Below are positions 1,511-30,602 of a stretch of 64,000 nucleotides of DNA, piece after piece. Location of the stretch: positions 1 to 64,000 of the IMG/VR virus record IMGVR_UViG_3300018080_008436; one strand, written 5' to 3'. The notes under the pieces were generated by a model. It had not been told where the DNA came from. It ran no database searches and saw only the letters and a program-made list of their open reading frames with translations. Within the stretch, counting starts at the first letter, position 1; every line of letters begins with the position of its first letter. The position numbers and the translations under genes were made by a program.

Positions 1511-1944
1511 TTTAACCCCTTACATGTATACTATTGAGCGTTGCGATTTCACAAGCGAAAATCTTGTGTGGTGTGAAAAAATTTAGGGAACCCTTATTTT
1601 CCTGTGTGAAAAAATTTAGGGAACCCTTATCACCCTGATAGGGTTCAAGGTGGAACCCTTATCGAAGACAAAGAGCTTCACTTTGCCTCAAGGACAAAGA
1701 GCTTCGCAATCTAGTTTTAGGGCACCCCCTACACCTGAAAAAGGTCAAATATTCGGAGGGGGGTGGGGGTACGTTTTCCCATATATAGAACATGCGTTTT
1801 TATATAAAAAATAAAAACAGTAGTACTCTTTTCATAATGCCTGCCGCTGTCCACCTGATTCTGGCAAAAGAAAAACCCCGCCTATCTCTAAGCGGGGTCA
1901 AGTTATTATTAAGTTTGGGATATAGAATCAGGTTAGTTCATACT

Positions 1945-2499
1945 TCATCCTCGTTTGTACAGTCGATGAGCGTTGTATCCTGCTACTTCGTTGTCTTGAG
2001 CAAATTTCCAGTATTTGGTAATGACCTGAGCCGACATGTCCTCATCGTCGATATGCTGGCTCATAAGCGTTACAAACTCAAAGTTGGACTCATCTACGAC
2101 TCCTTGGTCTACTTTGCGCGAGAGGCCGCAATAACGCGCTTCTCCGACCTCTGAAATGAACATCCCAGAGTAGAACCCTGTCAACTCATGCTTGTTAACG
2201 AATTGATCGGCATTGCACCAGATATAGACCGAGTTCTTTTTGGTCTTCAGCAAGGGGACAAACTGTTTGTCAATGCAATACCCTTTCCATCCGTCTTGCC
2301 AATTGAACGCGCCGACGCTAAACAGCCCCTTAGGCGAACCATGACCCATCATCATAATACGATCATGAGAGGCGATAAGTTCTTTGAGTTCTTGAGGGGT
2401 AACGCCCCCTGTTACAACTGTCTTGTCTTGGATATCTTTGTAGATGATTTCCAAGAACTGTGTTGAGTTGTCTTTAGGATGGATGATTAGGGTTGTCAT
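1945..2499 (-). CDS. hypothetical protein, possible caspase/gingipain-like His-Cys fold
   Basis: IMMMGHGS ... YIWCNA; SD and promoter upstream. Confidence 0.6.
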   Translation of the reverse strand: MTTLIIHPKDNSTQFLEIIYKDIQDKTVVTGGVTPQELKELIASHDRIMMMGHGSPKGLFSVGAFNWQDGWKGYCIDKQFVPLLKTKKNSVYIWCNADQFVNKHELTGFYSGMFISEVGEARYCGLSRKVDQGVVDESNFEFVTLMSQHIDDEDMSAQVITKYWKFAQDNEVAGYNAHRLYKRG

Positions 2500-2553
2500 T
2501 TCTTATCTCCTGTTACTATAACATAGCATACCGAGAGAATAAGTCAAATCGAT

Positions 2554-2901
2554 TCAGAACTTAATGTTGTGTTTTTCCATCAATTCTTCCATAAACTTTA
2601 ATTCTTCAACATTCCGTTTCAATTTTTTATGTTTCCGCTTCAACTCTTTGAGATTCTTTACATCCCAATGTAAATCAAAAGCGTATGCAATAGGTCGCTC
2701 ATCCTCTGGGGTATTCGGAAAGAATTTCACATCTTCCCTTGGTTTCCAATCCTTCACTTCATCCCAAGGGACCGTCAGACAAGTTTTATCTTCAAAGACA
2801 CAATGAACGCCGTTATCCCTATGAAAGCCATAGGTCTTGACCAATTCTCCCTCTGGTGTCTCGTAGTAAATTCCCGCTACAAAGTTCTCTTTAGTATTCA
2901 T
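2554..2901 (-). CDS. hypothetical protein
   Basis: Start overlaps upstream stop (TAATG). Confidence 0.65.
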   Translation of the reverse strand: MNTKENFVAGIYYETPEGELVKTYGFHRDNGVHCVFEDKTCLTVPWDEVKDWKPREDVKFFPNTPEDERPIAYAFDLHWDVKNLKELKRKHKKLKRNVEELKFMEELMEKHNIKF

Positions 2902-3116
2902 TAGACGCATCCTCCGCAACATTGGTGACCGCAAGTCTGGCATTCGCCTGCTGTCCAGTTGTCAAGGTCAGCATTTCCGTTTTTAGTTGGTCCGTAATCC
3001 CCTCCGCATTTGGGACAGATACGATAGTTGAAACAGTTTGTATTTTCGCAGGAGACAGGACAATCATTATAATTGTTTTTGATCTCATAGTGAGGTTCGC
3101 ATAAATGGCATTTCAT
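2901..3116 (-). CDS. Cys-rich Zn-binding protein
   Basis: Multiple CxxC; SD AGGAG. Confidence 0.7.
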   Translation of the reverse strand: MKCHLCEPHYEIKNNYNDCPVSCENTNCFNYRICPKCGGDYGPTKNGNADLDNWTAGECQTCGHQCCGGCV

Positions 3117-3349
3117 AGTGTTATCTCCTTTGTTTACTATAACATAGCATACCGAGAGAATAAGTCAAGCTGTCCAGGTGCTTTTCTTTCTTTCGAAAAG
3201 AGTACTACTAAAGTGGTTCAGATCAAGATCTTGATCGATGATCAAAATCAGCAGTATTCTTTTCGGAAATGACAGAAGCCAGAAAAAGGCCCTCAACCGA
3301 AGTCAAGGGCCATTGCGCAATCCCCTCTGGATTTGGGACCTAAATTGTC

Positions 3350-3511
3350 TTAGATTGGCTTATAATGAACCTCTCCGCATTTTGAACAGACAATCTCGTT
3401 TGTCTCGCATGGATGGACATAGCTTTCAAATTCCCGAAAGCAAGTCGAACATTTGAGAACCCAGAGATTCTTTTTGTCGTCATAGCTAATGACTTCAATC
3501 GTTCCGTACAT
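3350..3511 (-). CDS. 53-aa zinc-ribbon protein (not in ORF track)
   Basis: MYGTIEVISYDDKKNLWVLKCSTC...VCSKCGEVHYKPI; SD AAGGAG. Confidence 0.7.
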   Translation of the reverse strand: MYGTIEVISYDDKKNLWVLKCSTCFREFESYVHPCETNEIVCSKCGEVHYKPI

Positions 3512-3535
3512 GGGTATCTCCTTCCGAAAAGAGTA

Positions 3536-3937
3536 CTACTGTTGTGAGTCTTCCCATTCGCGCCATTTTTTGAGGTACTCGCCAGTTTCGGCTCGAATCT
3601 CTTCGACCGTAATGTCGTACCCTTGCAAGGCGTTTACGGTATCCGTAATGTCAAGGGTAATACAAAACTCATGATTCGCCAGTTCTCGATGAATGATAGC
3701 CTTCTTGCCGTTCTCTTCCATGTCCTGAGCGATACCCGCTTTGTGGATCTTTTCCAATCCTTCAAAGAGTTGATCGGCGTTTTCCTTGGGGCAGAAAAGG
3801 CCGTTAATCATCCGAACATAGGTAACGCCCTCTTTTTGTCCTTCGTTGAATTGCTTAATGTTAAAGGCAAAGAACGCACCCATTTCCTTAAGAAGCTTCG
3901 ACTGGGGTTCTTCGATGTACTGGCTAAGATACTTCAT
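3536..3937 (-). CDS. hypothetical phage protein
   Basis: SD AGGAG; stop codon lies inside a repeat arm. Confidence 0.8.
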   Translation of the reverse strand: MKYLSQYIEEPQSKLLKEMGAFFAFNIKQFNEGQKEGVTYVRMINGLFCPKENADQLFEGLEKIHKAGIAQDMEENGKKAIIHRELANHEFCITLDITDTVNALQGYDITVEEIRAETGEYLKKWREWEDSQQ

Positions 3938-3986
3938 CGTTTTCTCCTTTTGAAAAGAGTACTACTGTTGTGAGTTTTTCCATGTT

Positions 3987-4148
3987 TTACCCCAAGTTAT
4001 AGTTATCGGGATTCGGCGGATTTTCAACGTCTCCGGTTGCATAGGCCAACAACTCGACAATGTATTCTTGATTGTCGTCGGCGGTTGTTATTCCGATCTC
4101 TCGGAACTGGAAAAGGACTTGAGCGACTTTTGCTAGGAATTGGTTCAT
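3987..4148 (-). CDS. hypothetical protein
   Basis: SD and promoter upstream. Confidence 0.65.
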   Translation of the reverse strand: MNQFLAKVAQVLFQFREIGITTADDNQEYIVELLAYATGDVENPPNPDNYNLG

Positions 4149-4359
4149 TGTCTTATCTCCTTTGTCTACTTCTAACATAGCTCAAGATAGTGAAAAGTCA
4201 AACCGGTCTCCCGAGTTTTTTCATCTTTCAAAAAGAGTACTACTGTTTCACTTCAGCAGTACTCTTTTCAGAAGGAGGAGAGGGGGAGGGGGGGCAATAA
4301 AAAACCCCCTGCTCAGAAGAACAGGGGGCGGGCTTGGGGGACGCTTGGCGCGTCTTGGG

Positions 4360-4875
4360 TTAGGTAATGGGTTCGGGGGCCATTTCCTCTTCGACTTCGT
4401 CAGCCGTTACGGTATGGAGTTTGCGCAGGTATTCTACGCGAACATTGAAGGTCAAATGACCCTCTTTTGGGGGCCGTTTCTCAGAGGCGATCATTGTATG
4501 CTCGTAGTTCTCTTTGGGGACTTCTTGACCGTTGAGGAAGTATTGCGTTACGGTCTTGACGTTGTCGAAGGTTCCCGACTCCAAACGAACGGCGAGAGTA
4601 CCCGATTTGAGATGCCGTAAGGTCGTCGGATAGTTGACCCATTCATAACCTTTCAGACCTGCATTCTCGGCGGGGAGAGAGCCGTCAACGCGACCATGCT
4701 TGACTTCAAGAATGTTGTCGTACTTGACCGCGATCCGACAGAGCATGAGCGTCCGTTTCGTCAACGGCAGACCCGTATATGCTTTCTTGACCTTGACGGG
4801 GCGTTCCCATTCGACCATGATATTTGCGCCGTTGGGGATGACTTTCAAAGCTTCGTTGAACTGTTCGATTTTCAT
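4360..4875 (-). CDS. hypothetical protein
   Basis: Own promoter and terminator. Confidence 0.8.
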   Translation of the reverse strand: MKIEQFNEALKVIPNGANIMVEWERPVKVKKAYTGLPLTKRTLMLCRIAVKYDNILEVKHGRVDGSLPAENAGLKGYEWVNYPTTLRHLKSGTLAVRLESGTFDNVKTVTQYFLNGQEVPKENYEHTMIASEKRPPKEGHLTFNVRVEYLRKLHTVTADEVEEEMAPEPIT

Positions 4876-5223
4876 TGTTGTTACCCTTTGTTTTGTTGTT
4901 CCCTTGGTAGCCCTTTTGCTGATACCCCTACAGTAGCATCTCTAAAGAGGAAGTCAAGCGCAGTTGTGCGATTTTTTTATTTTCAAAAACAATACTCCTG
5001 TTTCTGTTCAGCAGTACTCTTTTTGAAAACCAGGTGGTTTTCCGCCAGAAAAAAATCGAGAAAAAATTCGAAAAAAATCGGAAATTCTGTCACAGCCGTT
5101 CTGGAGTTATTTCTAAAAAGAGTACTACTGTTTCACTTCAGCAGTAGTCTTTTTGGAATAGCCTCCAGATACCACAAAAAAAGCCCCCGTCCGAAGACGA
5201 GGGCCAGGGCCAGGGGCCAGGGG

Positions 5224-5382
5224 TTAGTTGTTCTTCAAGGCGTTAAGCTTCTTCATTGCGTCAGCGCAGACCTGCTTGTCCTCTGCGGTTGGCTCTTCAA
5301 GACGACCTGCTTTCATGTCTTGCAAGACCTCTTCAGCAATCGCTTCGGGGTTGACGGCGTCGATGAATTCCTGTTCAGTCAT
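5224..5382 (-). CDS. hypothetical protein
   Basis: SD GGGAG, own promoter and terminator. Confidence 0.7.
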   Translation of the reverse strand: MTEQEFIDAVNPEAIAEEVLQDMKAGRLEEPTAEDKQVCADAMKKLNALKNN

Positions 5383-5838
5383 GTTTCTGCTCCCTTGATT
5401 TGTTAGACTGTACTGATAAGATAGCATCTCTGCCTGGGATGTCAAGTCAGATTTCCAAGTAAAATTTTTTGTACTAGCATAAGAAATCTTATGGCTTCGA
5501 GCTACCCCCGCATCCCTTTCAAAAACAGTACTCCTGATTTGATTGAGCAGTACTCTTTTTGTAAGCCAGGTTCAGGCGGAAGGCGATCTGCGGGACAGAA
5601 AAAAGCAAAAAAATCGGAAATCCCTGTCACAGCCGTTCTGGGGCTATTTCTAAAAAGAGTACTACTGTTTCACTTCAGCAGTAGTCTTTTTGTAATCCAG
5701 GTGCTGGAAGGCGAGGGCTTCGGTCAAAGTCATCTGGGAACAAAAAAAGCCCTCGACCAAACGGGGCCGAGGGCTTGACGACGAGGGGAGAATAACCTCG
5801 TCAGCAGAACGGAAGTAGAGAAGAAATGAACAAAGACC

Positions 5839-6120
5839 CTACTTCCGTTTGGAGTCAGCTTTAGGAGGCTTCTGGGGCAACGGAAGCCGAACGGAACATG
5901 CAAGAGCATTAAATGCTTCTCGCGCCGTAAGAGGCTTCATAGGGGTTACAGGAGCGTTGACATAATTTGTTGTTGCTCGTTGATAGAGATTAGTATGCAT
6001 GAGAAGGGGTTCGTTGACATGGTCTTGCCAGTTTGTCATTTCTTGGATCTCCTTGGTTACTGGTCCTACTATGACATAGGTTTGGAAGATGTCAAATCGA
6101 TCTGGGAGATTTTTCTTCAT
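5839..6120 (-). CDS. hypothetical protein (no clear SD; abuts 38-bp site)
   Basis: ORF followed by terminator. Confidence 0.35.
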   Translation of the reverse strand: MKKNLPDRFDIFQTYVIVGPVTKEIQEMTNWQDHVNEPLLMHTNLYQRATTNYVNAPVTPMKPLTAREAFNALACSVRLPLPQKPPKADSKRK

Positions 6121-6496
6121 TTAAAAAGAGTACTCCTAATTTTATTCAGCAGTACTCTTTTTGAAAGCCAGATGCGGGGAAGCCAGATCCGCCAGATTCA
6201 GATGAGGCTGATCTTTCTGTCATGCGCATACATCATTCAGTGGGTAGAGGCGATCCAGGATCGAGTAAGTGTTTTCAAAAAGAGTACTTCTGTTTTAATT
6301 GAGTAGTACTCTTATTGTACGAACTCGCTATCCAGATAGGCTGACCTTCATAAGATTTCTTATATAAATACAAAAATATTTGTCTTTTGCTGTCACGCCT
6401 TCCAGCGGCTCATTTCTAAAAAGAATACTACTGTTTTGATTCAGCAGTACTCTTTTTGGAATCCAGGTGGCACTCGAAGGCTTCGCGGGAACACTA

Positions 6497-6660
6497 AAAA
6501 ACCCCCGATGGGAGGTCGGGGGTTTGTGAGCGGGAGGGTGGACCGCTCTTAGGGCCGAGACGGGTGAGGGTAATCAAGGGGTGGGGAAGCCCGTCTCTAG
6601 GGTTGTCGCATTGCGCGACTGTTGAATTATGTTACCAGTTCATTGCTTGCTCCTTTGTTA
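6497..6660 (-). ncRNA. candidate small RNA / minigene (Met-Asn-Trp-stop) transcription unit
   Basis: Promoter 6666-6693, SD AAGGAG, ATGAACTGGTAA at 6643-6632, three hairpins, terminator. Confidence 0.5.
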
Positions 6661-6712
6661 CTATCAACATAGCATGTTTAGTTTGATTGTCAAATCGTTC
6701 TAGGAAATTTTC

Positions 6713-7438
6713 TTATGCGCATGATAAGTCAAGCTGATATTCCTCGGGTACGTCATCATCACATTCAGTGGGTAGCTGATCCTCAAACCATTTACCAAAC
6801 TTATCAACATGACAGAGCTTGTTTTTGTTCTGGCTTTTGTAGCTCCAGTTACAACCGTTGATGATGTAACCATTACAGTTGAGGTACATTTCTCCTTCGC
6901 TAATACCCCAGTCGTCCAATTCGATTTCTGGGATACAAACCTTTCGGTCTCCCCCATAACCATGTTCTTCTGCAAGACCTTCAATAATGGGTTCGTAGTA
7001 ATATGATTCATGGCTATGCTTCCGACTAAAGAACGTCAAGCCGTCAAGGAGTTCTGTGTCATACATTCCCTCTCCTGCATGAAACTGATCGTTGGATACA
7101 TTGACAGAGCATGAGTCTTTTTCGATACAGTAGTTATACCATTGGAGGCAAGCCACTACGAATTCCTCTGTGATTTTCGCGCCGTTGGTTGCGATGTAGA
7201 AAGAGCCTACATCGACATTATTCTGCCGACAACGAATCAAGGTTTCTTTAATGGCCTTGACATTCAAAGAGGGTTCGCCCCCAGTAAATGTGATTGTACC
7301 GATTGAGGAAACTTGATCGATCAAACTATGGATGTGTTTGATATCGATGGTTTTGTTTTGGGCTTTACCCCGAAGACAGTGGGAACATTGGAACTGACAG
7401 CGTCGGGTAACTTCGATCATCAAATCTCTAACATACAT
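6713..7438 (-). CDS. radical SAM protein
   Basis: CQFQCSHC (CxxxCxxC), TGGEP, ATNG. Confidence 0.9.
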   Translation of the reverse strand: MYVRDLMIEVTRRCQFQCSHCLRGKAQNKTIDIKHIHSLIDQVSSIGTITFTGGEPSLNVKAIKETLIRCRQNNVDVGSFYIATNGAKITEEFVVACLQWYNYCIEKDSCSVNVSNDQFHAGEGMYDTELLDGLTFFSRKHSHESYYYEPIIEGLAEEHGYGGDRKVCIPEIELDDWGISEGEMYLNCNGYIINGCNWSYKSQNKNKLCHVDKFGKWFEDQLPTECDDDVPEEYQLDLSCA

Positions 7439-7675
7439 TGTAGTATCTCCCTTTTTGATTACTTCAACATAGCACAGGTTTTGATGTTGTCAAGTTGAGT
7501 TCTTAGATTTTCTTCACATATGCAGGCGCATTCAGTGGGTAGGTGATGTGCATTCAGTGGGTAGTTCTAGAAAGAGTACTACTAATTTGATTGAGTAGTA
7601 GTCTTTTTGGAAGAGCCTCCAGACACCACAAAAAAAGCCCTCATCCGAAGACGAGGGCGTTAGAGGATTGGTTGT

Positions 7676-7825
7676 TTATGAGAACATATGATACAGATCC
7701 ACGATTTGTTTACGTTTCTTTTGTGGCATGTTATCCCAACAAAGACCAGCATGTTCACGATTCTCTTTGATTCCACCTTTTGCTTGTAGGTAGATGATTG
7801 CTGTGATTCCTTCTTCTCTATCCAT
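7676..7825 (-). CDS. hypothetical protein
   Basis: SD AGGAG. Confidence 0.6.
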   Translation of the reverse strand: MDREEGITAIIYLQAKGGIKENREHAGLCWDNMPQKKRKQIVDLYHMFS

Positions 7826-7851
7826 TGTGATCTCCTGCGCTTTTAAAAAGA

Positions 7852-8277
7852 CTACTCCTGTTTTTGTTTTGGTTTCTTGGCCCACTCGCCAAACTTAGGG
7901 TAATTGATCTTTGGCACTTCTCCATGCCACTCGATTGTTTTGATTCCGTCTTTGAGTTTATAGAACTCTCCAACTATAAAAGGAAATTGAAAATGTTCTT
8001 CATCTCCTTTTTTGCAATATCCTTGATGATGAGGAAGCCACACTAAACGATCTTCCTCAACGGAGTTGAATGCCCATGGTCCAGTATCAGTGACATAGGA
8101 CAACAAGGCTTGTACTCCTTCACCGACAAAGCCCAACATCCCATCTTCATTCCGAACAAGATAATAGTCTTTGATTCGGAATTGATCGTGAGAACATTGC
8201 ACAGGACAAAGAAGTTTCTTTCCAAAGTATTTGTCTGGGAAAGTTTTCTTATAATAACAATGTTTTCGGACTATCAT
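7852..8277 (-). CDS. hypothetical protein
   Basis: ATGA overlap; stop inside repeat arm. Confidence 0.7.
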   Translation of the reverse strand: MIVRKHCYYKKTFPDKYFGKKLLCPVQCSHDQFRIKDYYLVRNEDGMLGFVGEGVQALLSYVTDTGPWAFNSVEEDRLVWLPHHQGYCKKGDEEHFQFPFIVGEFYKLKDGIKTIEWHGEVPKINYPKFGEWAKKPKQKQE

Positions 8278-8687: not shown

Positions 8688-8712
8688 CTTCTTCTCCCTT
8701 TCAAAAAGAGTA

Positions 8713-22579: not shown

Positions 22580-22582
22580 TTG

Positions 22583-22996: not shown

Positions 22997-23007
22997 TTTG
23001 CAATTTC

Positions 23008-23476: not shown

Positions 23477-23699
23477 TACTGTACCCCCTAAATGACATAC
23501 TCATTATACATTCCGTGCATGTCATTCGGTTTCCTCCCTTGAAACATTTTTCCTTTTACGAACCCATGACAAGAACATATAAATGATAATCATTGTCATG
23601 GTTGAGAAAATATAGCCCCAGACCAATCCCCTCAAATAGAAGTACATCGGATCTGGATTATTCCAATCAGTTAATAACATTTTCTTTCTCCTGTTAAAT

Positions 23700-23896
23700 T
23701 GGCAGGCTGGGTTGGATTCGAACCAACGTCCCTTCGTATACTACTCTCCGCTTTCCTGTCTAGCCTCAACAGTACATATCACTTTGAGTGACTCCAGATG
23801 TTTCATTTGACTTTTGGAACTAACCGCGTATCAGTTCCTACTAACAGACTACTTTATCCTTCTGTCTAACGATGCTCTCCTATGAGCTACCAGCCC
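23700..23896 (-). ncRNA. tRNA-like RNA with ~120-nt structured insert in place of anticodon loop
   Basis: GGGCTGG/CCAGCCT acceptor, GCTC/GAGC D arm, GTTGG-TTCGAAT-CCAAC T arm, GCCA end. Confidence 0.75.
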
Positions 23897-23904
23897 GTTA
23901 AATT

Positions 23905-24108
23905 TTACTCGACCTCTTCGATTGTGATCTTAAATTTCTTTCCGACAGGTTGTTTCGCCAACCACTCATCAAATTTGTCAAGCTCCACGTGAGCCTCTTC
24001 AGTTATCGAAGGAGAACAAAGCAACAGAAGGGTTGCGTTATATCTTTCAAGAACGTCAGGACACTCCTCTTGATTGTACTCGACATGTGCTTCGGTTTCA
24101 AATTTCAT
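23905..24108 (-). CDS. hypothetical protein
   Basis: SD AGGAG. Confidence 0.6.
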   Translation of the reverse strand: MKFETEAHVEYNQEECPDVLERYNATLLLLCSPSITEEAHVELDKFDEWLAKQPVGKKFKITIEEVE

Positions 24109-24123
24109 CGCCTTTCTCCTATT

Positions 24124-24209
24124 TGGTAGCTAGGGGGGGACTCGAACCCCCAATCCCAAAGGGCGGTTGATTTTAAGTCAACTGCGTATACCAATTCCGC
24201 CACCTAGCC
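24124..24209 (-). tRNA. tRNA-Leu(TAA)
   Basis: Cloverleaf with variable arm, GTTGA-CTTAAAA-TCAAC, CCA. Confidence 0.95.
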
Positions 24210-24215
24210 ATAAAA

Positions 24216-24575
24216 TTATTCCTCATACTCCGCAATGAACTTCAATGCTTCTGCAAGTGCATCAGCAATCTGTTTGTTCGTTGGATTCTCAGGAAGAGCA
24301 TCAAATGTTGACTCCATCAAACGTTCCCGATATCTACGACGACAAAGGATGATCAACTCTTTGTCAAATGCCTTGCGCCTATCATCTGACAAATGTGAAA
24401 TTGTTTTGGGCGACGGAAGCAAAGGAATGTACACCGCTCTAGGTTGATGATACTGAGGCTTCGATTGTGGAATATAAGCCGAGATCAACATCCCAATCGC
24501 AATTCCAAGAAGTGCGCATAAAGGATATACAGTCGGAAGAAACCATTTTGGAAATGTTTTCTTTTCTTCAGACAT
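24216..24575 (-). CDS. membrane-anchored hypothetical protein
   Basis: N-terminal TM. Confidence 0.65.
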   Translation of the reverse strand: MSEEKKTFPKWFLPTVYPLCALLGIAIGMLISAYIPQSKPQYHQPRAVYIPLLPSPKTISHLSDDRRKAFDKELIILCRRRYRERLMESTFDALPENPTNKQIADALAEALKFIAEYEE

Positions 24576-24774
24576 TCGGTTCACCTTTGAGTGACATTAC
24601 ATAGGCTTCCATGCAATCATATTCTGATTGATTCGGATTGTCATACTCTGACTCTCGAAACCAAACGTAGTGTTTCTGAACCAAATCCCATAACAGATCT
24701 GTTTCCAAATCAGGATATTTGATTCGAAGGAGTTCTGCTAAACAGAACATTGAATAGTTCATTGAGCCTTTCAT
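24568..24774 (-). CDS. hypothetical protein
   Basis: SD. Confidence 0.65.
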   Translation of the reverse strand: MKGSMNYSMFCLAELLRIKYPDLETDLLWDLVQKHYVWFRESEYDNPNQSEYDCMEAYVMSLKGEPNV

Positions 24775-24793
24775 TTCCTTTCTCCGTTAGAAA

Positions 24794-24911
24794 TGGGAGC
24801 CAGCCAAAGTTCCTGAACTTCGTTCAAGAGGCGGATAACCAAGTAACCCGTAAGCTTGCCATCAAACGAATTAAAAGCTTGTCCGAAGGACATCTCCTTG
24901 GCTGACTCCCA
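24794..24911 (-). ncRNA. candidate structured ncRNA A
   Basis: 15-bp closing stem GGGAGTCAGCCAAGG/CTTTGGCTGGCTCCC, C(UUCG)G hairpin. Confidence 0.6.
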
Positions 24912-24917
24912 AAAAGA

Positions 24918-25017
24918 TGGGATTGACATCTTTTGGCAAATGCACACCTTGAATCCACTTTCAAGTTCCAGTTATCCCGCTTACCTTTTACGTGGACTTT
25001 CAGCAGGACCAATCCCA
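24918..25017 (-). ncRNA. candidate structured ncRNA B
   Basis: Closing stem TGGGATTG/CAATCCCA, internal CTTGAA/TTCAAG hairpin. Confidence 0.5.
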
Positions 25018-25022
25018 AAAAT

Positions 25023-25262
25023 TTACGCTTCCTCGGTCTCAGCCTGGATCTGTTTGACATCCGAGAACAGAGTCAGAGTGACTTCCTGGGGAACCTCATA
25101 GATGGTTGAAGGTTTCCCCTTACCATCTGCTCGACGCTTCTGACCAACTTCTTTGACCATTCCTTTGTCCTGAAGAACATTCAGAAGGTTGCTGGCCTCG
25201 GCATAGTTGTTGAAGCCTCCCATTTCCTGGAATTCTTTTTTCGTGACTTCGACTGTTTTCAT
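25023..25262 (-). CDS. small winged-helix-like protein
   Basis: LLNVLQDKGMVKEV...GKGKPSTIY. Confidence 0.6.
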   Translation of the reverse strand: MKTVEVTKKEFQEMGGFNNYAEASNLLNVLQDKGMVKEVGQKRRADGKGKPSTIYEVPQEVTLTLFSDVKQIQAETEEA

Positions 25263-25272
25263 GTCTATCTCC

Positions 25273-25590
25273 TTATGTTTTCGGATCGAATGCTACTTCT
25301 CCACACATCTTAATGAAAGCCCTAGCCATAATCATAATGAAAGAGACCTGGACTATCTCAATAAAAAACAAAACAAAAAACGCATCAATGATACCCAAAT
25401 GAGTGTACCAAAGATATCCAACAGCAATCAGGTTCCCTGGAATCCAACCAAAGAAGAAAGAAACAGATCGACGGTATTCCATCATAGGATGAGCCGCCTT
25501 AAGTATCAACATCACTATCAACGGTGGTATGAAAAGAAGGCAAACTGCTGTCGCCCAGGCCATCGTTCCTATGAATGTCGGTTCTTCCAT
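25273..25590 (-). CDS. membrane protein
   Basis: Three hydrophobic segments; promoter upstream. Confidence 0.65.
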   Translation of the reverse strand: MEEPTFIGTMAWATAVCLLFIPPLIVMLILKAAHPMMEYRRSVSFFFGWIPGNLIAVGYLWYTHLGIIDAFFVLFFIEIVQVSFIMIMARAFIKMCGEVAFDPKT

Positions 25591-25868
25591 TGTTATGCTC
25601 CAGTATCTTTACTAATCAACATAACCCCCATTAACATTAAGTCAAGGCCATTTACAAAAAATAATAACCCGCTGTCGATCCAGGAGCCGCCGCCATCTTC
25701 TAAAAAGAGTACTACTGTTTTTATTCTGTAGTACTCTTTTTGAAAATCAGGACCCCAGCCGCCACACCAGCAGACCCTGATCGGACCTGAACAACAAAAA
25801 AGACCCCTACCAATTAAGGTAGAGGCCCATATGCCTATATGTACGAGATAAGCAACTATATTATACAA

Positions 25869-26621
25869 CTAAATCCCAATAACGAAATCCATATCCCCCA
25901 TTCTTTCGCTTGGATAACCCATCGGATTACGTACAAAACGTATATCGCCTAAATATCTATCTACGAAATCATGACTGTGTCCATGTATCCATAACGACAC
26001 ATCATCACCATGCATCATGATGAACGTATCCATGTCAGCCGCGAACGCCTCATTTAACGTATGATTACGCCAATTGGAAGAAATCAAATTGAATGATGGA
26101 AGATGATGAGTTACAATTATCCTCTTGGTCTTAACATTGACCAACTTGTACATCGACTCATTCAAAAAACCACGATTCAACAAATGATACTCATTAATCT
26201 TATCAACAGTCAAACCATCGATCATATGATAATCCCCCATCGAGTTCTTAATCGAAAAGGAATTGACTGCCCCTATATGTGTCCATAATGTTGAACATAT
26301 GAAAGAAACATCTTCGATCTCAACAATTTGGTTGTTGACATAATAACATTTGTTCCCATTCTTCTCAAACACTTGACGATGAGAACCAAAACTCGGATGA
26401 TCCCATGAGTCTTCCCAAAGATCATGATTACCAGGAATCATTACAATATGTTTCCACTTCGGCAATAAATGTTCTTGAATGAACTTCTCCCTCATCGGAG
26501 TATGATTACAGAAGTCTCCTGCAATTACCAGAACATCAGCCCTTGGAATCATTCGGTTAATAACATAACCGTAGTTCTTCTTAAACTCAATATGTTGATC
26601 AGAAAGGATCTGGATTTTCAT
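25869..26621 (-). CDS. calcineurin-like metallophosphoesterase
   Basis: SDQH, AGD, PGNHD, THH, HGHSH. Confidence 0.92.
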   Translation of the reverse strand: MKIQILSDQHIEFKKNYGYVINRMIPRADVLVIAGDFCNHTPMREKFIQEHLLPKWKHIVMIPGNHDLWEDSWDHPSFGSHRQVFEKNGNKCYYVNNQIVEIEDVSFICSTLWTHIGAVNSFSIKNSMGDYHMIDGLTVDKINEYHLLNRGFLNESMYKLVNVKTKRIIVTHHLPSFNLISSNWRNHTLNEAFAADMDTFIMMHGDDVSLWIHGHSHDFVDRYLGDIRFVRNPMGYPSERMGDMDFVIGI

Positions 26622-26838
26622 CTAAGTATTTCTCTTTTTGTTCCTGAAACCAAGGACCATATAAATCCCCAAGAGCATGCCACTCTTCAAGATTCAATTC
26701 TTTAATCCTGTCTCTAACATCCGAAGACTTCTTGAACCATTTATTCAGAAACTCCTGGTTTGTTTTCATCTCAGGTTGTTTCAAAGCTAAAATGACATCT
26801 TTCATGTCCTCAAATAATTGTTTTACTTTCTCATTCAC
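26599..26838 (-). CDS. hypothetical protein
   Basis: ORF in operon. Confidence 0.6.
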   Translation of the reverse strand: MNEKVKQLFEDMKDVILALKQPEMKTNQEFLNKWFKKSSDVRDRIKELNLEEWHALGDLYGPWFQEQKEKYLDENPDPF

Positions 26839-27273
26839 ATATGCCCCCAGGCATTCAGTGCATAGTTTGCATAGCCTGCACCAATTCAGGTTAAGAATGT
26901 GCTTGCATTCGCAGACCCATTCAGTGGATGGTTACATCGTAGCTACTCTCTTATGACAATGTGGACATTTGACAATTCGAGTCTTTCGATGGTAGGCTTC
27001 CTCTGCCGCTCGTTTCAGGTTATAACGTTTCCGACAATGACGACACGTAAAATATGTGTTAAGGTCAATTGGTCTTGGCATTTTTGTTCTTTCATTGAAT
27101 GTTCCTGTCTCTCCCTTTATTATATCGCATAATTGAAGGATGTCAATCCCCTAAGGAATCTCAATCCTCCTGGAGTATGTCGCGATTATTATACTTCTTG
27201 CGGCCTGCCTTCTGAGCCTTGAACTTCCGACGCTTGTCACGAGTGTAAGGGTCCTGCTTCTTGCGATGTCTTT

Positions 27274-27609
27274 TCATATGATACCTCCTGCATCTTGTTG
27301 TAGTTTGTTCAACAGATATTCTTCACCACCCTGGTCCTTGAACATTTGATCATGCAACTTATAACGAAGACCACGAGTCTCAGTCTCTAACCGCTTGGTC
27401 AAACCTTCCCAGGACTTCATCGCCAAATCCAAACACTCTGAAGGAACATGAAAACCTTCTTGCTCCTGTGCAATGGTCTCAGATTCAACTGACATATAGA
27501 AGCTGGCCAAAGCTTCTGCAACATCATAAGCAGTTGTCTGCATATAAATATCACCATCAGCCTCTTCCAACATCTTGTCCAACTGATCATTAATTTGTTG
27601 TGGAGTCAT
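27274..27609 (-). CDS. hypothetical protein
   Basis: ORF in operon. Confidence 0.65.
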   Translation of the reverse strand: MTPQQINDQLDKMLEEADGDIYMQTTAYDVAEALASFYMSVESETIAQEQEGFHVPSECLDLAMKSWEGLTKRLETETRGLRYKLHDQMFKDQGGEEYLLNKLQQDAGGII

Positions 27610-27778
27610 CTTTCTTTCCTTCTCTCAGTTCTTTCCAGAATTTCCGCAAATCACTCAGGCTACCAATCTCAAGTATCGAGAGTGTTAAAGCAAAAAAGGA
27701 TATGAAGAGCATCACGATGATGAAAGTAATCAATATCATGATAACTACAGGAAAGAAAATGTTAAGCATGAAATTCAT
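27590..27778 (-). CDS. small membrane protein
   Basis: Hydrophobic N-terminus; SD. Confidence 0.6.
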   Translation of the reverse strand: MNFMLNIFFPVVIMILITFIIVMLFISFFALTLSILEIGSLSDLRKFWKELREGKKDDSTTN

Positions 27779-27875
27779 CCGATCTCTCCTCGTTCTCTTT
27801 TGTCCTCATACTCAGCTTGCTTAGCAAGTCCAGGCAAAGCTGGTATCAGGTAGATTAACATAATGATGAATCTGA

Positions 27876-28082
27876 TCATTCCCACTCCTTATGATCGCCA
27901 AATTCCATCGCATCTTCATAGCCTTGACGGTACTCAGCAATTTCTTCTTCTGTCATTTCTTCTTCACCAATCCGCAGACCATGATAGGTGCCTTCTGGAT
28001 ACCAATGAGGTTTCTGGCCCCTTCTATAATAAGCGTCTGCTCTTCCTCTATCATAAGGGCTACCATGTTTTACCTGATTCAT
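27876..28082 (-). CDS. hypothetical phage protein
   Basis: HGSPYDRGRADAYYRR motif; SD GGAGG. Confidence 0.75.
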   Translation of the reverse strand: MNQVKHGSPYDRGRADAYYRRGQKPHWYPEGTYHGLRIGEEEMTEEEIAEYRQGYEDAMEFGDHKEWE

Positions 28083-28112
28083 CGCCGCCTCCTAGTCCTT
28101 TCAAAAAGAGTA

Positions 28113-28589
28113 CTACTGATCCTCTTCAGGATCTTCGGGATTCAAATGCTTGAACTCCTCAACCATATCCCGTTTCCAGAGCAATTCAACATCATGAACC
28201 TTACCATCATTCATGTTAATCTGAATATAGTTGGGAAAGATCTTGAGATCCTGAATATCAAACTTGCAGATCTCAAACTCTTCGTCACAAGAGGAAATGA
28301 CCAAATCATCTCGAATGATCTCCCCCTCAGTAACATCAACAAACAAAGACATACCATCGGCAATGATAGCTTCACAATCCCGAACCATATCAAAGAACAA
28401 ATCGATATGTTTATTATATCGATGCTCGATCTCAGTGGTATACTGGACATCATCAGCCTTTACGTCTGAGAAATTTGTATTGGCCGCTTTGAACTCTGCC
28501 TTTGATCGAGCATCCTCATCACTATCAGCTTCAACATCGACAATGATGGTCTTGGCTTCGATTCGACTAACTCTAACTCGGAAATTCAT
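28113..28589 (-). CDS. hypothetical protein
   Basis: Stop inside repeat arm. Confidence 0.7.
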   Translation of the reverse strand: MNFRVRVSRIEAKTIIVDVEADSDEDARSKAEFKAANTNFSDVKADDVQYTTEIEHRYNKHIDLFFDMVRDCEAIIADGMSLFVDVTEGEIIRDDLVISSCDEEFEICKFDIQDLKIFPNYIQINMNDGKVHDVELLWKRDMVEEFKHLNPEDPEEDQ

Positions 28590-28802
28590 TTACTTCACCT
28601 TTACAACTGTTACTTGGGTTAACTTTTTGTAACGAATCTGAACGCTAGTCACTCCAGCATTCTTCAGGTCCGACTTGTTGCAAGGCTTCCCATCCCATTT
28701 GGAAAAGAAATCCGCAACAATGAAATCCTTGTCGGCCTCAAAGTCTTCCTTGACTTTCTTGGCAGAAGTGTAATCTCGGTTATAGGCTGGGGTCAATGTC
28801 AT
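28590..28802 (-). CDS. hypothetical phage protein
   Basis: LTPAYNRDY motif. Confidence 0.7.
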   Translation of the reverse strand: MTLTPAYNRDYTSAKKVKEDFEADKDFIVADFFSKWDGKPCNKSDLKNAGVTSVQIRYKKLTQVTVVKVK

Positions 28803-29179
28803 TTTTCAATCTCCTTTACTTCAATGATCTTGGTTTCTTTGTTCGTCAGAATCTTTAATGCACAAGTCAAACAGTAACGATCTGATTCATCATCCTGAGA
28901 AATGATTGTGACTGAATCATCCCCAATGTTACAAATCTTGTCGCAACCAGCACATTCAAATTCATCTTCCTGAATTGCTTTCATATCTTCATAAAGACAA
29001 CAGGTCGTTGCAACAACTTCATTCCGTCGTTCATCAAGAATGTCAACGACTACGCCTTCATCGTCTAACTTAATCTGTACTTGACCAGACGCAAGGTCCA
29101 GATAAAAATAATCATGAGGTCCAATTTTCTGGTGAGAAATTGGACGACCTCCAAGATCCGTAATTGTCATCTGAGACAT
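28799..29179 (-). CDS. hypothetical protein
   Basis: CAGC...CLTC; SD. Confidence 0.7.
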   Translation of the reverse strand: MSQMTITDLGGRPISHQKIGPHDYFYLDLASGQVQIKLDDEGVVVDILDERRNEVVATTCCLYEDMKAIQEDEFECAGCDKICNIGDDSVTIISQDDESDRYCLTCALKILTNKETKIIEVKEIEK

Positions 29180-29191
29180 AACAACTCCCCT

Positions 29192-29395
29192 TTATTCTAC
29201 CGTTCCGTTCAGTTTGTCAATCCAACCATCATCATCCGAAAAGTAAACAGCTACCTCTCCGTTGTCCCAAATATCAATCTCGACCTTGTAGCCTTTATCA
29301 AGCTCAATGGTCAACTCTTCCTTGGGAGAGCTATCAGGTCTTTCATGAGTGATCTTGTAACCATTGAAAACAACTTCCTTGGAATTATCAGACAT
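29192..29395 (-). CDS. hypothetical protein
   Basis: SD AAGGAG. Confidence 0.65.
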   Translation of the reverse strand: MSDNSKEVVFNGYKITHERPDSSPKEELTIELDKGYKVEIDIWDNGEVAVYFSDDDGWIDKLNGTVE

Positions 29396-29406
29396 AATAA
29401 CTCTCC

Positions 29407-30117
29407 TTAATGTTGGGGAACCCAGGTCTTGCTTCCCCGCTTGGAACAGCGGTCACATTTTTTGCAATTCATAGGACATTCTTTGTAACCCTTGGGGGGC
29501 TTCTCACCTTTGGGAACCATTTTGAATTCATTGATAACCCCAGCCTTTTGGAAATTTGAACCATTGACAACCAGGGTCCGAACATTCTTGAATTCCAGAT
29601 CATGACGAGAAGTGTAACAGTATACCGTAATGTCAAACTTCTTTAACAGCCGAGCAATTTTCTCAGCTTTGTCAACACATGCCTGGGAATGAAAATCCCC
29701 AGCTTCATTCAAACGAATTTTGTCAAACTTATCCCGTTTGGTTGCATTAATGATCAGGAAATGAGAAACGAATTTCTCTGGGGTGATTGTCAGCCAGTAG
29801 CCAGTTTGGCGGCGGCGGAAAGGAAGAACATTGGGCCGATACTCCCGTTCGGACTTCTTGGCATAACAAATGTTCTTGCCATCGATAACAGCCTTACAAA
29901 TGCCTCGAAGCCGAGAAGGACAGTCAGTAGCGCTAGACATATTAAATATAGCTGTGGTATTAGGGATTTTGGTATTGCCTGCGCGAAGCAATCCGTCAAG
30001 AACGGAAATGTCTTGATCCAGGAGTTTGGCGAAGCTATAAAGCAAAGACATCCCCTGAGTCTTGCCATAGGCTTCAATTGAGGTTAAAACGTTTGTGGGT
30101 ACTGATCCGGTCGCCAT
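29407..30117 (-). CDS. phage Gp88-like Cys-cluster protein
   Basis: GNTKI, DCP....C.......CYA, IRLNEAGDF, YCYT, C-terminal CP..CxxCxxC. Confidence 0.7.
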   Translation of the reverse strand: MATGSVPTNVLTSIEAYGKTQGMSLLYSFAKLLDQDISVLDGLLRAGNTKIPNTTAIFNMSSATDCPSRLRGICKAVIDGKNICYAKKSEREYRPNVLPFRRRQTGYWLTITPEKFVSHFLIINATKRDKFDKIRLNEAGDFHSQACVDKAEKIARLLKKFDITVYCYTSRHDLEFKNVRTLVVNGSNFQKAGVINEFKMVPKGEKPPKGYKECPMNCKKCDRCSKRGSKTWVPQH

Positions 30118-30602
30118 ACTAAATCCTCTGTTTAGGGTTTGCGATCTCAACAGCAACAACATAGCATCCCAATACCAGGCTGTCAAACCCATTTAGCAAA
30201 AATAATTCGAGTTTCTATTTTTACGGTCTCAAATTATTATAAGCGGTTAAACTATTAAAAGACCCCTTCGGGGCTTTTTATAGTTTACTTTTTTACTTTT
30301 TAAAAAGAGTACTACAGAATAGAAACAGGAGTACTCTTTTTGAAAATAGGAGTATCAGCCGCCAGGTCCTGGATCGAGTTCATTGCCTGAATCGCCTGGT
30401 TCGACAGCCGCCCACACCAGGCTTCTTTCAAAAAGAGTACTACAGAATTAAAACAGAAGTACTCTTTTTAAAAGGTCTGCTGGAGACCAGGCTAAAAGGT
30501 TTGCTGAAGACCATGATGGGCTGTTTATATACTACGTATATAAAAAAAATGGCTCAGGAACAAAATCCCAAGCCATTTGAATTGTTTAGAATGTATGTGA
30601 AA

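What the first reader, a model, noticed from the sequence alone, without database searches (positions are those of the whole stretch)
1818..30468. Array of self-contained gene cassettes delimited by a loxP-like 38-bp element
Seen: 22 full copies of AAAAGAGTACTNCTG-[8 bp]-CAGNAGTACTCTTTT (perfect arms at 13965 and 19217), always intergenic. Spacer length is constant while spacer sequence is asymmetric and T-rich (TTTCACTT, TTTTGATT, TTTTTATT, TTTTAATT). Sites typically lie between one operon's terminator and the next operon's promoter, so the region reads promoter > 1-several small genes > terminator > site, repeated. I saw none after 30.5 kb. Known: inverted arms around a 6-8 bp asymmetric spacer is the geometry of tyrosine-recombinase sites (loxP, FRT, dif), and T4-type PeSL promoter/stem-loop repeats are implicated in module shuffling. 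Inference: an integron-like cassette shuffling system for early genes, or a high-copy binding lattice for a phage protein. No recombinase is visible in this window.
Basis: partly seen in the sequence, partly recalled or inferred. Interest (0 to 1): 0.92.

Follow-up and report, generated by a model that had tools for sequence, protein, structure and literature searches.

The report
Conserved palindrome punctuating megaphage early genes
A 48-base palindrome repeated 22 times sits just after the terminators in the early-gene region of a 524-kb uncultivated phage; it is most likely a protein-recognised boundary element that has also served as a crossover point for swapping gene units, and no dedicated loxP/integron-type recombination system was found.

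Summary
The window holds 22 full copies, one split copy and 6 half copies of the palindrome (chance expectation 0). All lie in window 1.8-30.5 kb. Word scans of the whole 524-kb contig found only one more half copy.

The genes run on the minus strand. The repeating unit is promoter, 1-9 small unique genes, G+C-rich terminator, element, next promoter. The element goes with terminators (16 of 17) more than with promoters (15 of 26).

It is conserved as sequence, not as structure. There is no compensatory change, hairpin energies range from -3.8 to -17.8 kcal/mol, the loop has invariant A's, and one arm is better kept. The half copies keep only that arm.

Homology between copies always stops inside the element. 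Three copies have different partners on their two sides, and two of three upstream tracts end in an arm, before the spacer.

The best reading is a protein-recognised unit-boundary element in a PeSL-like terminator/promoter cassette. It has been used as a linker for homologous recombination.

The integron/tyrosine-recombinase reading has no support beyond the site geometry. No recombinase domain lies within -10 to +67 kb, the spacers are heterogeneous, and the cassettes carry their own promoters. It cannot be excluded, because no raw reads, no diverged relatives and no full-genome protein scan were available.

The parts
4231..4268 (-). element, full copy
   Evidence: 0 mismatches; minus-strand spacer AAGTGAAA; core hairpin -15.6 kcal/mol
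4986..5023 (-). element, full copy (second of a tandem pair)
   Evidence: 2 mismatches; spacer AACAGAAA; -9.5; 28 nt before the -35 at 4957
5116..5153 (-). element, full copy; mosaic
   Evidence: 1 mismatch; AAGTGAAA; upstream flank like 7570, downstream flank like 5653
5522..5559 (-). element, full copy
   Evidence: 2 mismatches; AATCAAAT; -7.7
5653..5690 (-). element, full copy
   Evidence: 1 mismatch; 38/38 identical to 5116, upstream flank unrelated
6124..6161 (-). element, full copy (third of a run of three)
   Evidence: 1 mismatch; AATAAAAT; -13.0
6278..6315 (-). element, full copy
   Evidence: 2 mismatches; AATTAAAA; -6.8
6419..6456 (-). element, full copy
   Evidence: 1 mismatch; AATCAAAA; -13.3
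7570..7607 (-). element, degenerate full copy; mosaic
   Evidence: more than 3 mismatches; -5.4; upstream like 5116, downstream like 10220 and 11793
9061..9098 (-). element, full copy
   Evidence: 1 mismatch; AATTAAAA; -10.6
9319..9356 (-). element, full copy
   Evidence: 1 mismatch; AATCAAAA; shares 16 nt upstream with 30431
10220..10257 (-). element, degenerate full copy
   Evidence: weakest hairpin, -3.8; 44 nt downstream homology with 11793
10613..10650 (-). element, full copy
   Evidence: 0 mismatches; AAATAAAA; -15.6
11793..11830 (-). element, full copy
   Evidence: 3 mismatches; AATCAAAA; -6.8
13965..14002 (-). element, perfect palindrome
   Evidence: 0 mismatches, complementary N; AATAAAAA; -17.8
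15368..15405 (-). element, full copy
   Evidence: 2 mismatches; AATCAGAA; no canonical terminator upstream
16298..16335 (-). element, full copy
   Evidence: 0 mismatches; AATAAAAA; shares 17 nt upstream with 19217
19217..19254 (-). element, perfect palindrome; mosaic
   Evidence: 0 mismatches; upstream like 16298, downstream like 22083
22083..22120 (-). element between two convergent terminators
   Evidence: 1 mismatch; no promoter follows
25703..25740 (-). element, full copy
   Evidence: 1 mismatch; AATAAAAA; 57 nt before the -35 at 25645
30303..30340 (+). element, loop flipped
   Evidence: 1 mismatch; loop A-rich on the + strand
30431..30468 (+). element, loop flipped; first of the array
   Evidence: 1 mismatch; upstream flank homologous to 9319 although the loop is inverted
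3196..3264 (-). split copy: two arms 38 bp apart
   Evidence: the inserted stretch holds its own GATC-rich palindrome; the -35 at 3168 follows 27 nt later
3527..3541 (-). half copy (3' arm) inside an operon
   Evidence: its TAG is the stop of gene 3536-3937; ribosome site and ATG follow
3953..3967 (-). half copy (3' arm)
   Evidence: family D15: 86% identical junction to 3527
7846..7860 (-). half copy (3' arm, AGTAGT variant)
   Evidence: its TAG ends gene 7852-8277
8704..8718 (-). half copy (3' arm)
   Evidence: its TAG ends gene 8713-8946
28104..28118 (-). half copy (3' arm)
   Evidence: its TAG ends gene 28113-28589
1818..1833 (+). single arm at the downstream end of the array
   Evidence: 40 nt after terminator 1899-1874
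5747..5776 (-). G+C-rich terminator
   Evidence: -22.1 kcal/mol; element 56 nt downstream
10746..10777 (-). G+C-rich terminator
   Evidence: -21.6; gap of 95 nt to the element
4304..4329 (-). G+C-rich terminator
   Evidence: -21.4; gap 35
5182..5205 (-). G+C-rich terminator
   Evidence: -18.5; gap 28
16397..16428 (-). G+C-rich terminator
   Evidence: -20.0; gap 61
11854..11879 (-). G+C-rich terminator
   Evidence: -18.4; gap 23
9406..9434 (-). G+C-rich terminator
   Evidence: -17.9; gap 49
6499..6525 (-). G+C-rich terminator
   Evidence: -15.6; gap 42
7637..7658 (-). G+C-rich terminator
   Evidence: -16.0; gap 29; paralogue of 5182-5205
14052..14070 (-). G+C-rich terminator
   Evidence: gap 49
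19303..19329 (-). G+C-rich terminator missed by the scan
   Evidence: fold; gap 48
22166..22187 (-). G+C-rich terminator
   Evidence: -16.8; gap 45
25801..25828 (-). G+C-rich terminator
   Evidence: -18.1; gap 60
30547..30578 (-). terminator of the first unit
   Evidence: -17.9; gap 78
3288..3311 (-). G+C-rich terminator before the split copy
   Evidence: -16.2; gap 23
1874..1899 (-). last terminator of the array
   Evidence: -18.3; gap 40 to the single arm
2519..31637 (-). about 26 sigma-70-like promoters, typically TTGACA-16-TATGTT; about 8 carry the A/T-rich block upstream
   Evidence: (families D9, D10); 15 have an element 27-116 nt upstream of the -35

Best explanation
The element is the conserved core of a repeated intergenic module: terminator, element, then usually a promoter. 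This module partitions a 29-kb early-gene region of a 524-kb phage into about 18 independently transcribed units of unique small genes.

Shown:
- It sits 23-95 nt after nearly every terminator.
- It is conserved as a double-stranded sequence rather than as a hairpin.
- It is asymmetric: one arm and the A-rich centre are better kept, in a fixed direction relative to transcription.
- It marks the point where homology between different intergenic regions switches partner.

Inferred:
- It is recognised by a sequence-specific protein, probably a dimer or two dimers on the two AGTACT-centred arms 22 bp apart.
- That protein acts at unit boundaries as an insulator or roadblock, or as a co-ordinate regulator of the early region, in the manner of multi-copy 'stoperator' sites.
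- Because 48 bp of near-identity recurs at every boundary, the phage's general recombination machinery has used it as a linker. This reassorts flanking modules and gene units, as described for PeSL cassettes of T4-type phages.
For: - Copy number and confinement.
- Layout: 16 of 17 strong minus-strand terminators are followed by an element. Only 15 of 26 promoters are preceded by one. Copy 22083 lies between convergent terminators with no promoter.
- Sequence, not structure: 87.3% of cells pair, against 87.9% in shuffles, with no excess of compensatory change. Core hairpins range from -3.8 to -17.8 kcal/mol, whereas neighbouring real terminators are about -16 to -22 with unrelated sequences. 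There are 23 invariant columns, including loop A's.
- Asymmetry: the 3' arm has 10 departures from consensus, the 5' arm 22.
- Half copies keep only the 3' arm, so no hairpin is possible there.
- CCWGG is about 12-fold enriched in the 30 bp on either side.
- No paralogous genes, so the repeats are not by-products of gene duplication.
- Recombination junction: of 231 copy pairs, 3 share upstream and 5 share downstream homology, and none shares both. Copies 5116, 7570 and 19217 have different partners on each side.
- The PeSL precedent is PMC2839356 and PMC4122927; the stoperator precedent is PMC9283540.
Against: - No binding protein is identified. Nearly all neighbouring proteins lack any family assignment.
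- No transcript data exist for this phage.
- Sequence conservation could in part be kept up by gene conversion among copies rather than by selection for binding.
- The distance to promoters and terminators is variable, so no fixed geometry with RNA polymerase is implied.
- The PeSL stem-loop is itself the terminator, whereas here a separate terminator is present.
- No diverged relative was found, so cassette turnover between genomes is not shown.
Confidence: 0.5

Rival explanations
1. Site-specific recombination site. A phage tyrosine recombinase, or another dedicated recombinase, binds the two arms and exchanges strands in the 8-bp spacer. It thereby excises, inserts or reorders early-gene cassettes.
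For: - The geometry matches loxP/FRT: inverted arms of at least 15 bp around a constant 8-bp asymmetric spacer.
- The sites are nearly all in direct orientation at cassette boundaries.
- Groups of 3-4 sites share identical spacers.
- Flank homologies switch partner at the element.
- The tract shared by 16298 and 19217 ends just past the spacer.
Against: - No integrase, recombinase, resolvase or transposase domain lies within -10 to +67 kb.
- There are ten spacer variants, so most site pairs would be incompatible.
- Two of three upstream tracts end at arm position 11/12, before the spacer.
- The element cores have a history different from both flanks.
- Every assembly is colinear.
- Half copies are fused to gene ends in a way a precise exchange would not produce.
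- The rest of the genome and raw reads could not be examined.
Confidence: 0.08
2. Structural RNA or DNA hairpin. The element would be a back-up bidirectional intrinsic terminator, or an RNase III-type processing or stabilising hairpin for read-through transcripts.
For: - A stem of up to 20 pairs is followed by a run of T's on both strands. Individual copies fold at -23 to -28 kcal/mol, z about -8.
- It always lies at unit ends.
- At 15368 and 10220 no canonical terminator precedes it.
Against: - There is no compensatory covariation.
- A third of the copies have weak cores, -3.8 to -7.7 kcal/mol.
- The loop sequence is conserved.
- Half copies are conserved without any partner arm.
- 16 elements sit behind a strong terminator and would seldom be transcribed.
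- Genuine terminators in the same region show the opposite pattern: structure kept, sequence free.
Confidence: 0.14
3. Selfish or neutral palindrome. A long palindrome that is prone to breakage and is repaired from other copies would spread and homogenise by gene conversion, with no function for the phage.
For: - Element cores reassort relative to both flanks. The core of 11793 is like that of 9319 while its downstream flank is like that of 10220.
- Spacer classes cluster by position.
- The loop of 30431 is flipped inside unchanged flanks.
- The family is lineage-restricted.
Against: - Placement is strict, after terminators and in one genome region only.
- One arm is consistently better kept, and the orientation is consistent.
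- There are no target-site duplications.
- Half copies are kept at gene junctions.
- Adjacent terminators are not homogenised.
Confidence: 0.15
4. Promoter or upstream activator site. The better-kept arm would be recognised by a phage-encoded or virion-delivered RNA polymerase or activator. In the half copies that arm lies 15-22 nt before a start codon.
For: - The arm has a directional, roughly 20-nt conserved sequence.
- Half copies lie directly before ribosome sites.
- The half copy at 146.9 kb and three array copies lie 27-29 nt before a -35.
Against: - Consensus host-type promoters, some with upstream A/T-rich blocks, already serve these units.
- Distances to the -35 vary from 27 to 116 nt without helical phasing.
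- Seven elements have no promoter or gene start after them.
- Internal promoters lack the element.
- It is absent from the other 490 kb.
Confidence: 0.08

Closest known systems
PeSL (promoter-early stem-loop) cassettes of T4-type phages (PMC2839356, PMC4122927)
   Same: - A repeated composite of stem-loop, A/T-rich block, sigma-70-like promoter and ribosome site, lying between small orphan early genes.
- The units are transcriptionally self-contained.
- The repeats act as linkers for recombination, and degraded or half motifs occur.
   Different: - Here a separate, sequence-variable G+C-rich terminator is present.
- The repeated palindrome is much longer (48 bp), A/T-rich and almost invariant in sequence.
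- It goes with terminators rather than promoters.
- The host phage is a 524-kb uncultivated phage of unknown affiliation.
- Mini-circles and differences between genomes are not shown here.
Stoperators of cluster A mycobacteriophages (PMC9283540)
   Same: - More than twenty copies of one conserved site lie in short intergenic spaces.
- Their orientation correlates with the direction of transcription.
- The proposed action is on elongating polymerase at unit boundaries.
   Different: - Stoperators are asymmetric 13-mers bound by a monomeric immunity repressor and are spread over the whole genome of temperate phages.
- This element is a 38-48-bp palindrome confined to 5% of the genome, and no repressor is known.
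loxP / FRT / dif-type tyrosine-recombinase sites (established knowledge)
   Same: Inverted arms around a 6-8-bp asymmetric spacer of constant length.
   Different: - The arms are longer.
- The spacer sequence varies among sites.
- No recombinase was found nearby.
- Mapped homology switches are not confined to the spacer.
Integron attC cassette arrays (established knowledge)
   Same: A one-directional array of small gene units, each followed by an imperfect palindrome.
   Different: - attC sites are conserved in folded structure, not sequence.
- Integron cassettes are promoterless and need intI, attI and Pc.
- Here every unit has its own promoter and terminator, and the site is conserved in sequence.
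REP/BIME extragenic palindromes of enterobacteria (recalled, not tested)
   Same: Imperfect palindromes of 35-40 bp lie after the 3' ends of transcription units, often in clusters, and are protein-bound in the bacterial case.
   Different: These are bacterial, occur genome-wide in hundreds of copies, and are associated with RAYT transposases. None of this was seen or tested here.

Membership tests
PeSL-type regulatory cassette | Composite of a stem-loop just upstream of an A/T-rich block and a sigma-70-like early promoter | tested here: met
   15 elements lie 27-116 nt upstream of a TTGACA-16-TATGTT-type promoter; about 8 of these promoters carry the conserved A/T-rich block
PeSL-type regulatory cassette | Lies between small orphan genes of a plastic early region | tested here: met
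   About 18 units of unique genes, nearly all without family hits and with no paralogues
PeSL-type regulatory cassette | The stem-loop is the transcription terminator | tested here: inconclusive
   A separate strong terminator precedes 16 elements. The element's own hairpin is often weak and shows no covariation. No transcript data exist
PeSL-type regulatory cassette | Recombination break-points coincide with the motif | tested here: met
   Tested within the genome only: all 8 extended flank homologies end in the element, and there are 3 mosaics. Between genomes this was not testable, because all relatives are at least 99.9% identical
PeSL-type regulatory cassette | Mini-circles formed by exchange between neighbouring motifs | not testable with these tools
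   Only assembler contigs were available, and they break at the repeat
Tyrosine-recombinase core site (loxP/FRT-like) | Inverted arms around a 6-8-bp asymmetric spacer | tested here: met
Tyrosine-recombinase core site (loxP/FRT-like) | Cognate recombinase encoded by the element's genome | tested here: inconclusive
   None in precomputed Pfam hits from -10 to +67 kb. The other roughly 450 kb were not examined
Tyrosine-recombinase core site (loxP/FRT-like) | Partner sites share the spacer sequence | tested here: not met
   Ten spacer variants in 22 sites; the largest classes have 4 members
Tyrosine-recombinase core site (loxP/FRT-like) | Exchange confined to the spacer | tested here: inconclusive
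   Two of three upstream tracts end at arm position 11/12 and one ends just past the spacer. The extant copies may not be the true parents
Integron | intI integrase, attI and a common promoter with promoterless cassettes | tested here: not met
   No integrase was seen, and each unit has its own promoter and terminator
Integron | attC conserved as folded structure with variable sequence | tested here: not met
   The sequence is conserved and there is no covariation
Stoperator-type multi-copy operator | Many copies in intergenic spaces, oriented with transcription | tested here: met
   22 copies, 20 in one orientation, with unequal conservation of the arms
Stoperator-type multi-copy operator | Bound by a phage repressor that blocks elongation | not testable with these tools
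   No candidate was identified; this needs a pull-down or gel shift
Intrinsic terminator | Stable stem kept by compensatory change, followed by a U run | tested here: not met
   The U run is present, but pairing is no better than in shuffles and core stability is very uneven
Rfam RNA families | Match to a curated covariance model | tested here: not met
   Only tRNAs reach threshold in 1-34 kb

The most novel reading that the evidence does not exclude
The palindromes are the sites of a dedicated phage-encoded recombination system, with a loxP-like site and a recombinase encoded elsewhere in the 524-kb genome. This system would excise, capture and reorder promoter-bearing early-gene cassettes: a phage counterpart of an integron for host-takeover genes.
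Probability: 0.08. Interest if true: 0.9.

Novelty: new variant of a known kind. Interest (0 to 1): 0.55.

Why it matters
Huge phages carry hundreds of small early genes of unknown function, and little is known about how that repertoire is regulated and renewed. This genome shows an unusually clean architecture. Every early unit is closed by a terminator followed by one nearly invariant 48-bp palindrome, and the homology between intergenic regions switches partner in that palindrome.

If the element is a protein-bound insulator, it offers a defined bait for finding a new early-phase regulator of a megaphage.

If it is mainly a recombination linker, it extends the PeSL idea of regulatory cassettes that drive modular gene shuffling. 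So far that idea is documented in T4-type phages (PMC2839356, PMC4122927). This case would extend it to a 524-kb phage with no close relatives in the collections searched. It would also give a concrete prediction of where related genomes will differ.

Tried and rejected
- **Collection scans with scattered N's.** These returned nothing even for the window's own contig, so they are false negatives. I replaced them with contiguous words.
- **Relatives.**
  - Megablast against phage records found nothing.
  - tblastn of a 294-aa array protein found only remote hits, and its best homologue is 41% identical on a 1.2-kb contig.
  - The FtsH-like protein has a 51% relative on a 23-kb contig without any such palindrome.
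  - Every other contig carrying array proteins is 99.9-100% identical and colinear.
- **Reads.** No RNA run was listed. The DNA runs are kept only as contigs, which break at the repeat. The listed 'joints' have 29-65 nt on the short side and are cross-matches between copies.
- **Rfam.** Nothing relevant.
- **Binding-protein candidates.**
  - Pfam and PHROG scans of 26 window proteins and 6 proteins at 146.9 kb found no helix-turn-helix or recombinase domain.
  - The 144-aa first-operon protein resembles WYL_2/SH3-like phage proteins, as a lead only.
  - The N-terminal domain of the 307-aa lysine-rich protein has no homologues. It has only weak winged-helix look-alikes and an unusable model with pLDDT 46, so no fold search was run.
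- **Considered by eye and dropped.**
  - A LexA-type box: the TACTG/CAGTA halves are 8 bp apart, not 10 (recalled consensus).
  - IHF and Fis consensus sequences.
  - A sigma-54 promoter in the GTGCC flank.
  - A -35/-10 pair inside the element.
  - A MITE with target-site duplication: the flanks are inverted, not direct.
  - AGTACT avoidance elsewhere in the window: 7 sites in 32-64 kb, about the number expected.

Full report
**Where the window comes from.** The window is the first 64 kb of IMG/VR contig IMGVR_UViG_3300018080_008436 (476,248 bp). That record is JGI contig Ga0180433_10000003 (524,692 bp) with its first 48,444 bp removed. The same phage, at 99.9-100% identity and colinear over the whole window, is present in other assemblies. 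These are ENA ERZ27256796 (523,871 bp), ERZ27256783, JGI 3300028840 and 3300017963, and a Logan assembly. The runs holding it are sediment and seawater metagenomes. No isolate phage is close.

**The observation.**
- The 38-mer occurs 20 times at up to 3 mismatches, all between 4231 and 30468, against 0 in shuffles.
- Aligned, the copies show a palindrome of about 48 bp: TTTCA, then AAAAGAGTACTNCTG, 8 bp, CAGNAGTACTCTTTT, then TGAAA. It has 23 invariant and 11 nearly invariant columns out of 50.
- There is also one split copy (3196-3264, arms 38 bp apart), five half copies inside operons and one single arm at 1818.
- Exact-word scans (a 15-mer in IMG/VR, an 18-mer in the JGI metagenome contigs) find multiple copies only in this phage's own contigs. 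Within the 524-kb genome they find only the array plus one half copy at about 146.9 kb.
- The 10 kb beyond the window start has none.
- My first three collection scans, with scattered N's, were false negatives and are disregarded.

**Anatomy.**
- Genes, promoters and terminators are on the minus strand, so the units read from 31.6 kb down to 1.8 kb.
- Each unit starts with a sigma-70-like promoter, typically TTGACA, 16 nt ending in TGC, then TATGTT. About 8 of them carry a conserved A/T-rich block upstream.
- One to about nine small genes follow, then a G+C-rich intrinsic terminator.
- The element lies 23-95 nt after the terminator stem for 16 of the 17 strong terminators. The exception is 11158-11131, which abuts the next promoter.
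- Only 15 of 26 promoters have an element within 120 nt upstream, at 27-116 nt with no phasing. Internal promoters without a preceding terminator have none.
- Copy 22083 lies between two convergent terminators with no promoter after it.
- So the element belongs to the ends of units. Five gaps hold two or three elements 128-154 bp apart with no gene between them.
- The array holds no paralogous genes. Almost no protein has a family assignment.

**Sequence or structure.**
- Single copies fold well as RNA on either strand, at -23 to -28 kcal/mol.
- Across the 22 copies, however, pairing is no better than when the 3' letters are shuffled among copies: 87.3% against 87.9%, with 465 of 500 shuffles as high. 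Double changes are not enriched.
- Substitutions simply break pairs. The 11-pair core ranges from -3.8 to -17.8 kcal/mol.
- The real terminators a few dozen bases away are uniformly stable, about -16 to -22 kcal/mol, and have unrelated sequences.
- The loop is not free: four of its A positions are invariant or nearly so.
- The arm nearer the next promoter has half as many departures from consensus as the other, 10 against 22.
- The five intra-operon half copies keep exactly that arm plus an A-rich remnant of the loop. In all five, the TAG inside the arm is the stop codon of the upstream gene, and a ribosome site and ATG follow within 15-22 nt.
- A hairpin cannot form at the half copies, yet the arm is conserved.
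- This pattern indicates recognition of the sequence, most simply by a DNA-binding protein, rather than a structural terminator or processing hairpin.
- CCWGG is about 12-fold enriched in the 30 bp on each side, often at fixed offsets. That fits a larger nucleoprotein site.

**Recombination.** No diverged relative exists in the collections, so I used the copies themselves.
- Of 231 copy pairs, three share homology that extends upstream of the element: 5116/7570 for 51 nt, 16298/19217 for 17 nt and 9319/30431 for 16 nt.
- Five pairs share homology extending downstream: 10220/11793 for 44 nt, 5116/5653 for 29, 19217/22083 for 24, and 7570 with 11793 and with 10220 for 22 each.
- No pair shares both sides.
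- Copies 5116, 7570 and 19217 have different partners on their two sides.
- The element cores also have their own affinities. For example, the core of 11793 resembles that of 9319, while its downstream flank resembles that of 10220.
- The element is therefore a historical crossover point.
- Two of the three upstream tracts end at arm position 11/12, before the spacer. The third runs through the spacer into the other arm.
- This looks like homologous exchange within a patch of identity, as proposed for PeSLs (PMC2839356), more than like Cre-type exchange confined to the spacer. Extant copies need not be the true parents, so this is suggestive only.
- Copy 30431 has a flipped loop inside an upstream flank homologous to that of 9319. 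The flip is therefore internal to the palindrome.

**The recombinase idea.**
- The geometry fits loxP and FRT.
- Against it: no integrase, recombinase, resolvase or transposase domain is on record from -10 to +67 kb. An HNH nuclease is the only nuclease-type hit.
- There are ten spacer variants among 22 sites, and the cassettes carry their own promoters.
- The site is conserved in sequence, unlike attC.
- All assemblies are colinear.
- Reads could not settle it. Only contigs are kept, they break at the repeat, and the apparent joints are cross-matches of 29-65 nt.
- The remaining roughly 450 kb of the genome was not scanned for recombinases.

**Conclusion.** The best-supported reading is a sequence-specific, probably protein-bound boundary element within a PeSL-like terminator/promoter cassette (PMC2839356, PMC4122927).
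- Its likely role is in insulating or co-ordinately controlling about 18 strongly transcribed early units. The nearest functional precedent is the stoperator (PMC9283540).
- Its documented side role is as a linker for recombination between units.
- The boundary placement, the sequence-level conservation, the asymmetry and the mosaic flanks are shown. The protein, its effect on transcription and ongoing shuffling are inferred.
- Confidence is about 0.5.
- The rivals are a structural hairpin (0.14), a selfish gene-converting palindrome (0.15), a dedicated site-specific system (0.08) and a promoter or activator site (0.08).

Noticed in passing
window 1466-1510, 15474-15519, 31698-31742, 31973-31989: There is a second palindrome family, TTAGTAA-WWW-TTACTAA, with seven copies. 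Three pairs are spaced 28 bp apart and one copy is single. The pairs lie just outside the two ends of the element array and once in its middle, and the pair at 31.7 kb lies about 60-100 nt upstream of the first promoter. It looks like an operator of a different regulator.
   Followed up: partly
window 6231-32326, minus strand only: A non-palindromic motif, CAC(T/G)GAATG with a Y-A-Y-S prefix, occurs in 17 copies, all on the transcribed strand. Several occur as pairs 22 nt apart, and several lie 33-66 nt upstream of a -35 (7493, 10112, 11712, 31637, 6693). It is probably another regulator's site.
   Followed up: partly
window 31600-32300: A 700-bp non-coding stretch lies ahead of the first early unit. 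It is packed with repeats: four copies of the CACKGAATG motif, three TTAGTAA palindromes and a direct repeat TTGACCTATCTTGGGGG(G)AGACC. It is a possible master control region or origin.
   Followed up: no
flanks of the elements, window 4-31 kb: CCWGG is about 12-fold enriched within 30 bp on each side of the elements. It is often at fixed offsets, ending 6 nt before the 38-mer or starting 18 nt after it. Runs such as CCAGG repeated every 9-11 bp also occur.
   Followed up: partly
window 14102-15025 (-): A 307-aa early protein has a long Lys/Glu/Ala-rich middle and a histone-H1-like tail with four KKAPAK repeats. Assemblies differ by one 18-bp repeat unit, giving 301 or 307 aa. Its N-terminal 140 aa have no homologues. 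It is a candidate DNA-binding protein, but its link to the element is untested.
   Followed up: partly
window 20076-20152, 22920-22996, 24124-24209 (-): Three tRNA genes, Arg(TCT), Met(CAT) and Leu(TAA), are embedded among the early units.
   Followed up: no
window 45334-47364 (-), 57037-57765 (-), 59-64 kb: Downstream of the array lies a long, tightly packed gene block without elements. It encodes an FtsH-like AAA+/M41 protease (676 aa, best relatives 51% and 40% identical on short contigs). It also encodes an HNH nuclease, two NUDIX proteins, an IF1/eIF-1a-like protein, an NT5C nucleotidase, a nucleoside hydrolase and a pyrimidine-dimer excision enzyme.
   Followed up: partly
L032:1581-1595 (IMG/VR contig about 146.9 kb): The only copy outside the array is a single 3' arm. 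It lies between a 176-aa gene that follows a RecJ-like gene and a promoter serving two small unknown genes of 103 and 70 aa.
   Followed up: partly
window 5468-5483 and 6345-6360: A further small palindrome, ATAAGA-WWW-TCTTAT, occurs in two intergenic regions near elements.
   Followed up: no
window 1800-30500 versus 30501-64000: The array is richer in G+C (43.2%) than the rest of the window (38.8%).
   Followed up: no
JGI contig Ga0180433_10000003, first 48,444 bp (before window position 1): IMG/VR trimmed 48 kb off the original contig. The 10 kb next to the window (L061) carries larger genes on both strands, including a PAP2 phosphatase and an EF-Tu-like GTPase, and has no elements.
   Followed up: partly
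window 21532-21993 (+): This is the one clear plus-strand gene in the array (DUF6011). It has its own plus-strand terminator at 22012-22039, convergent with the unit ending at 22166.
   Followed up: no
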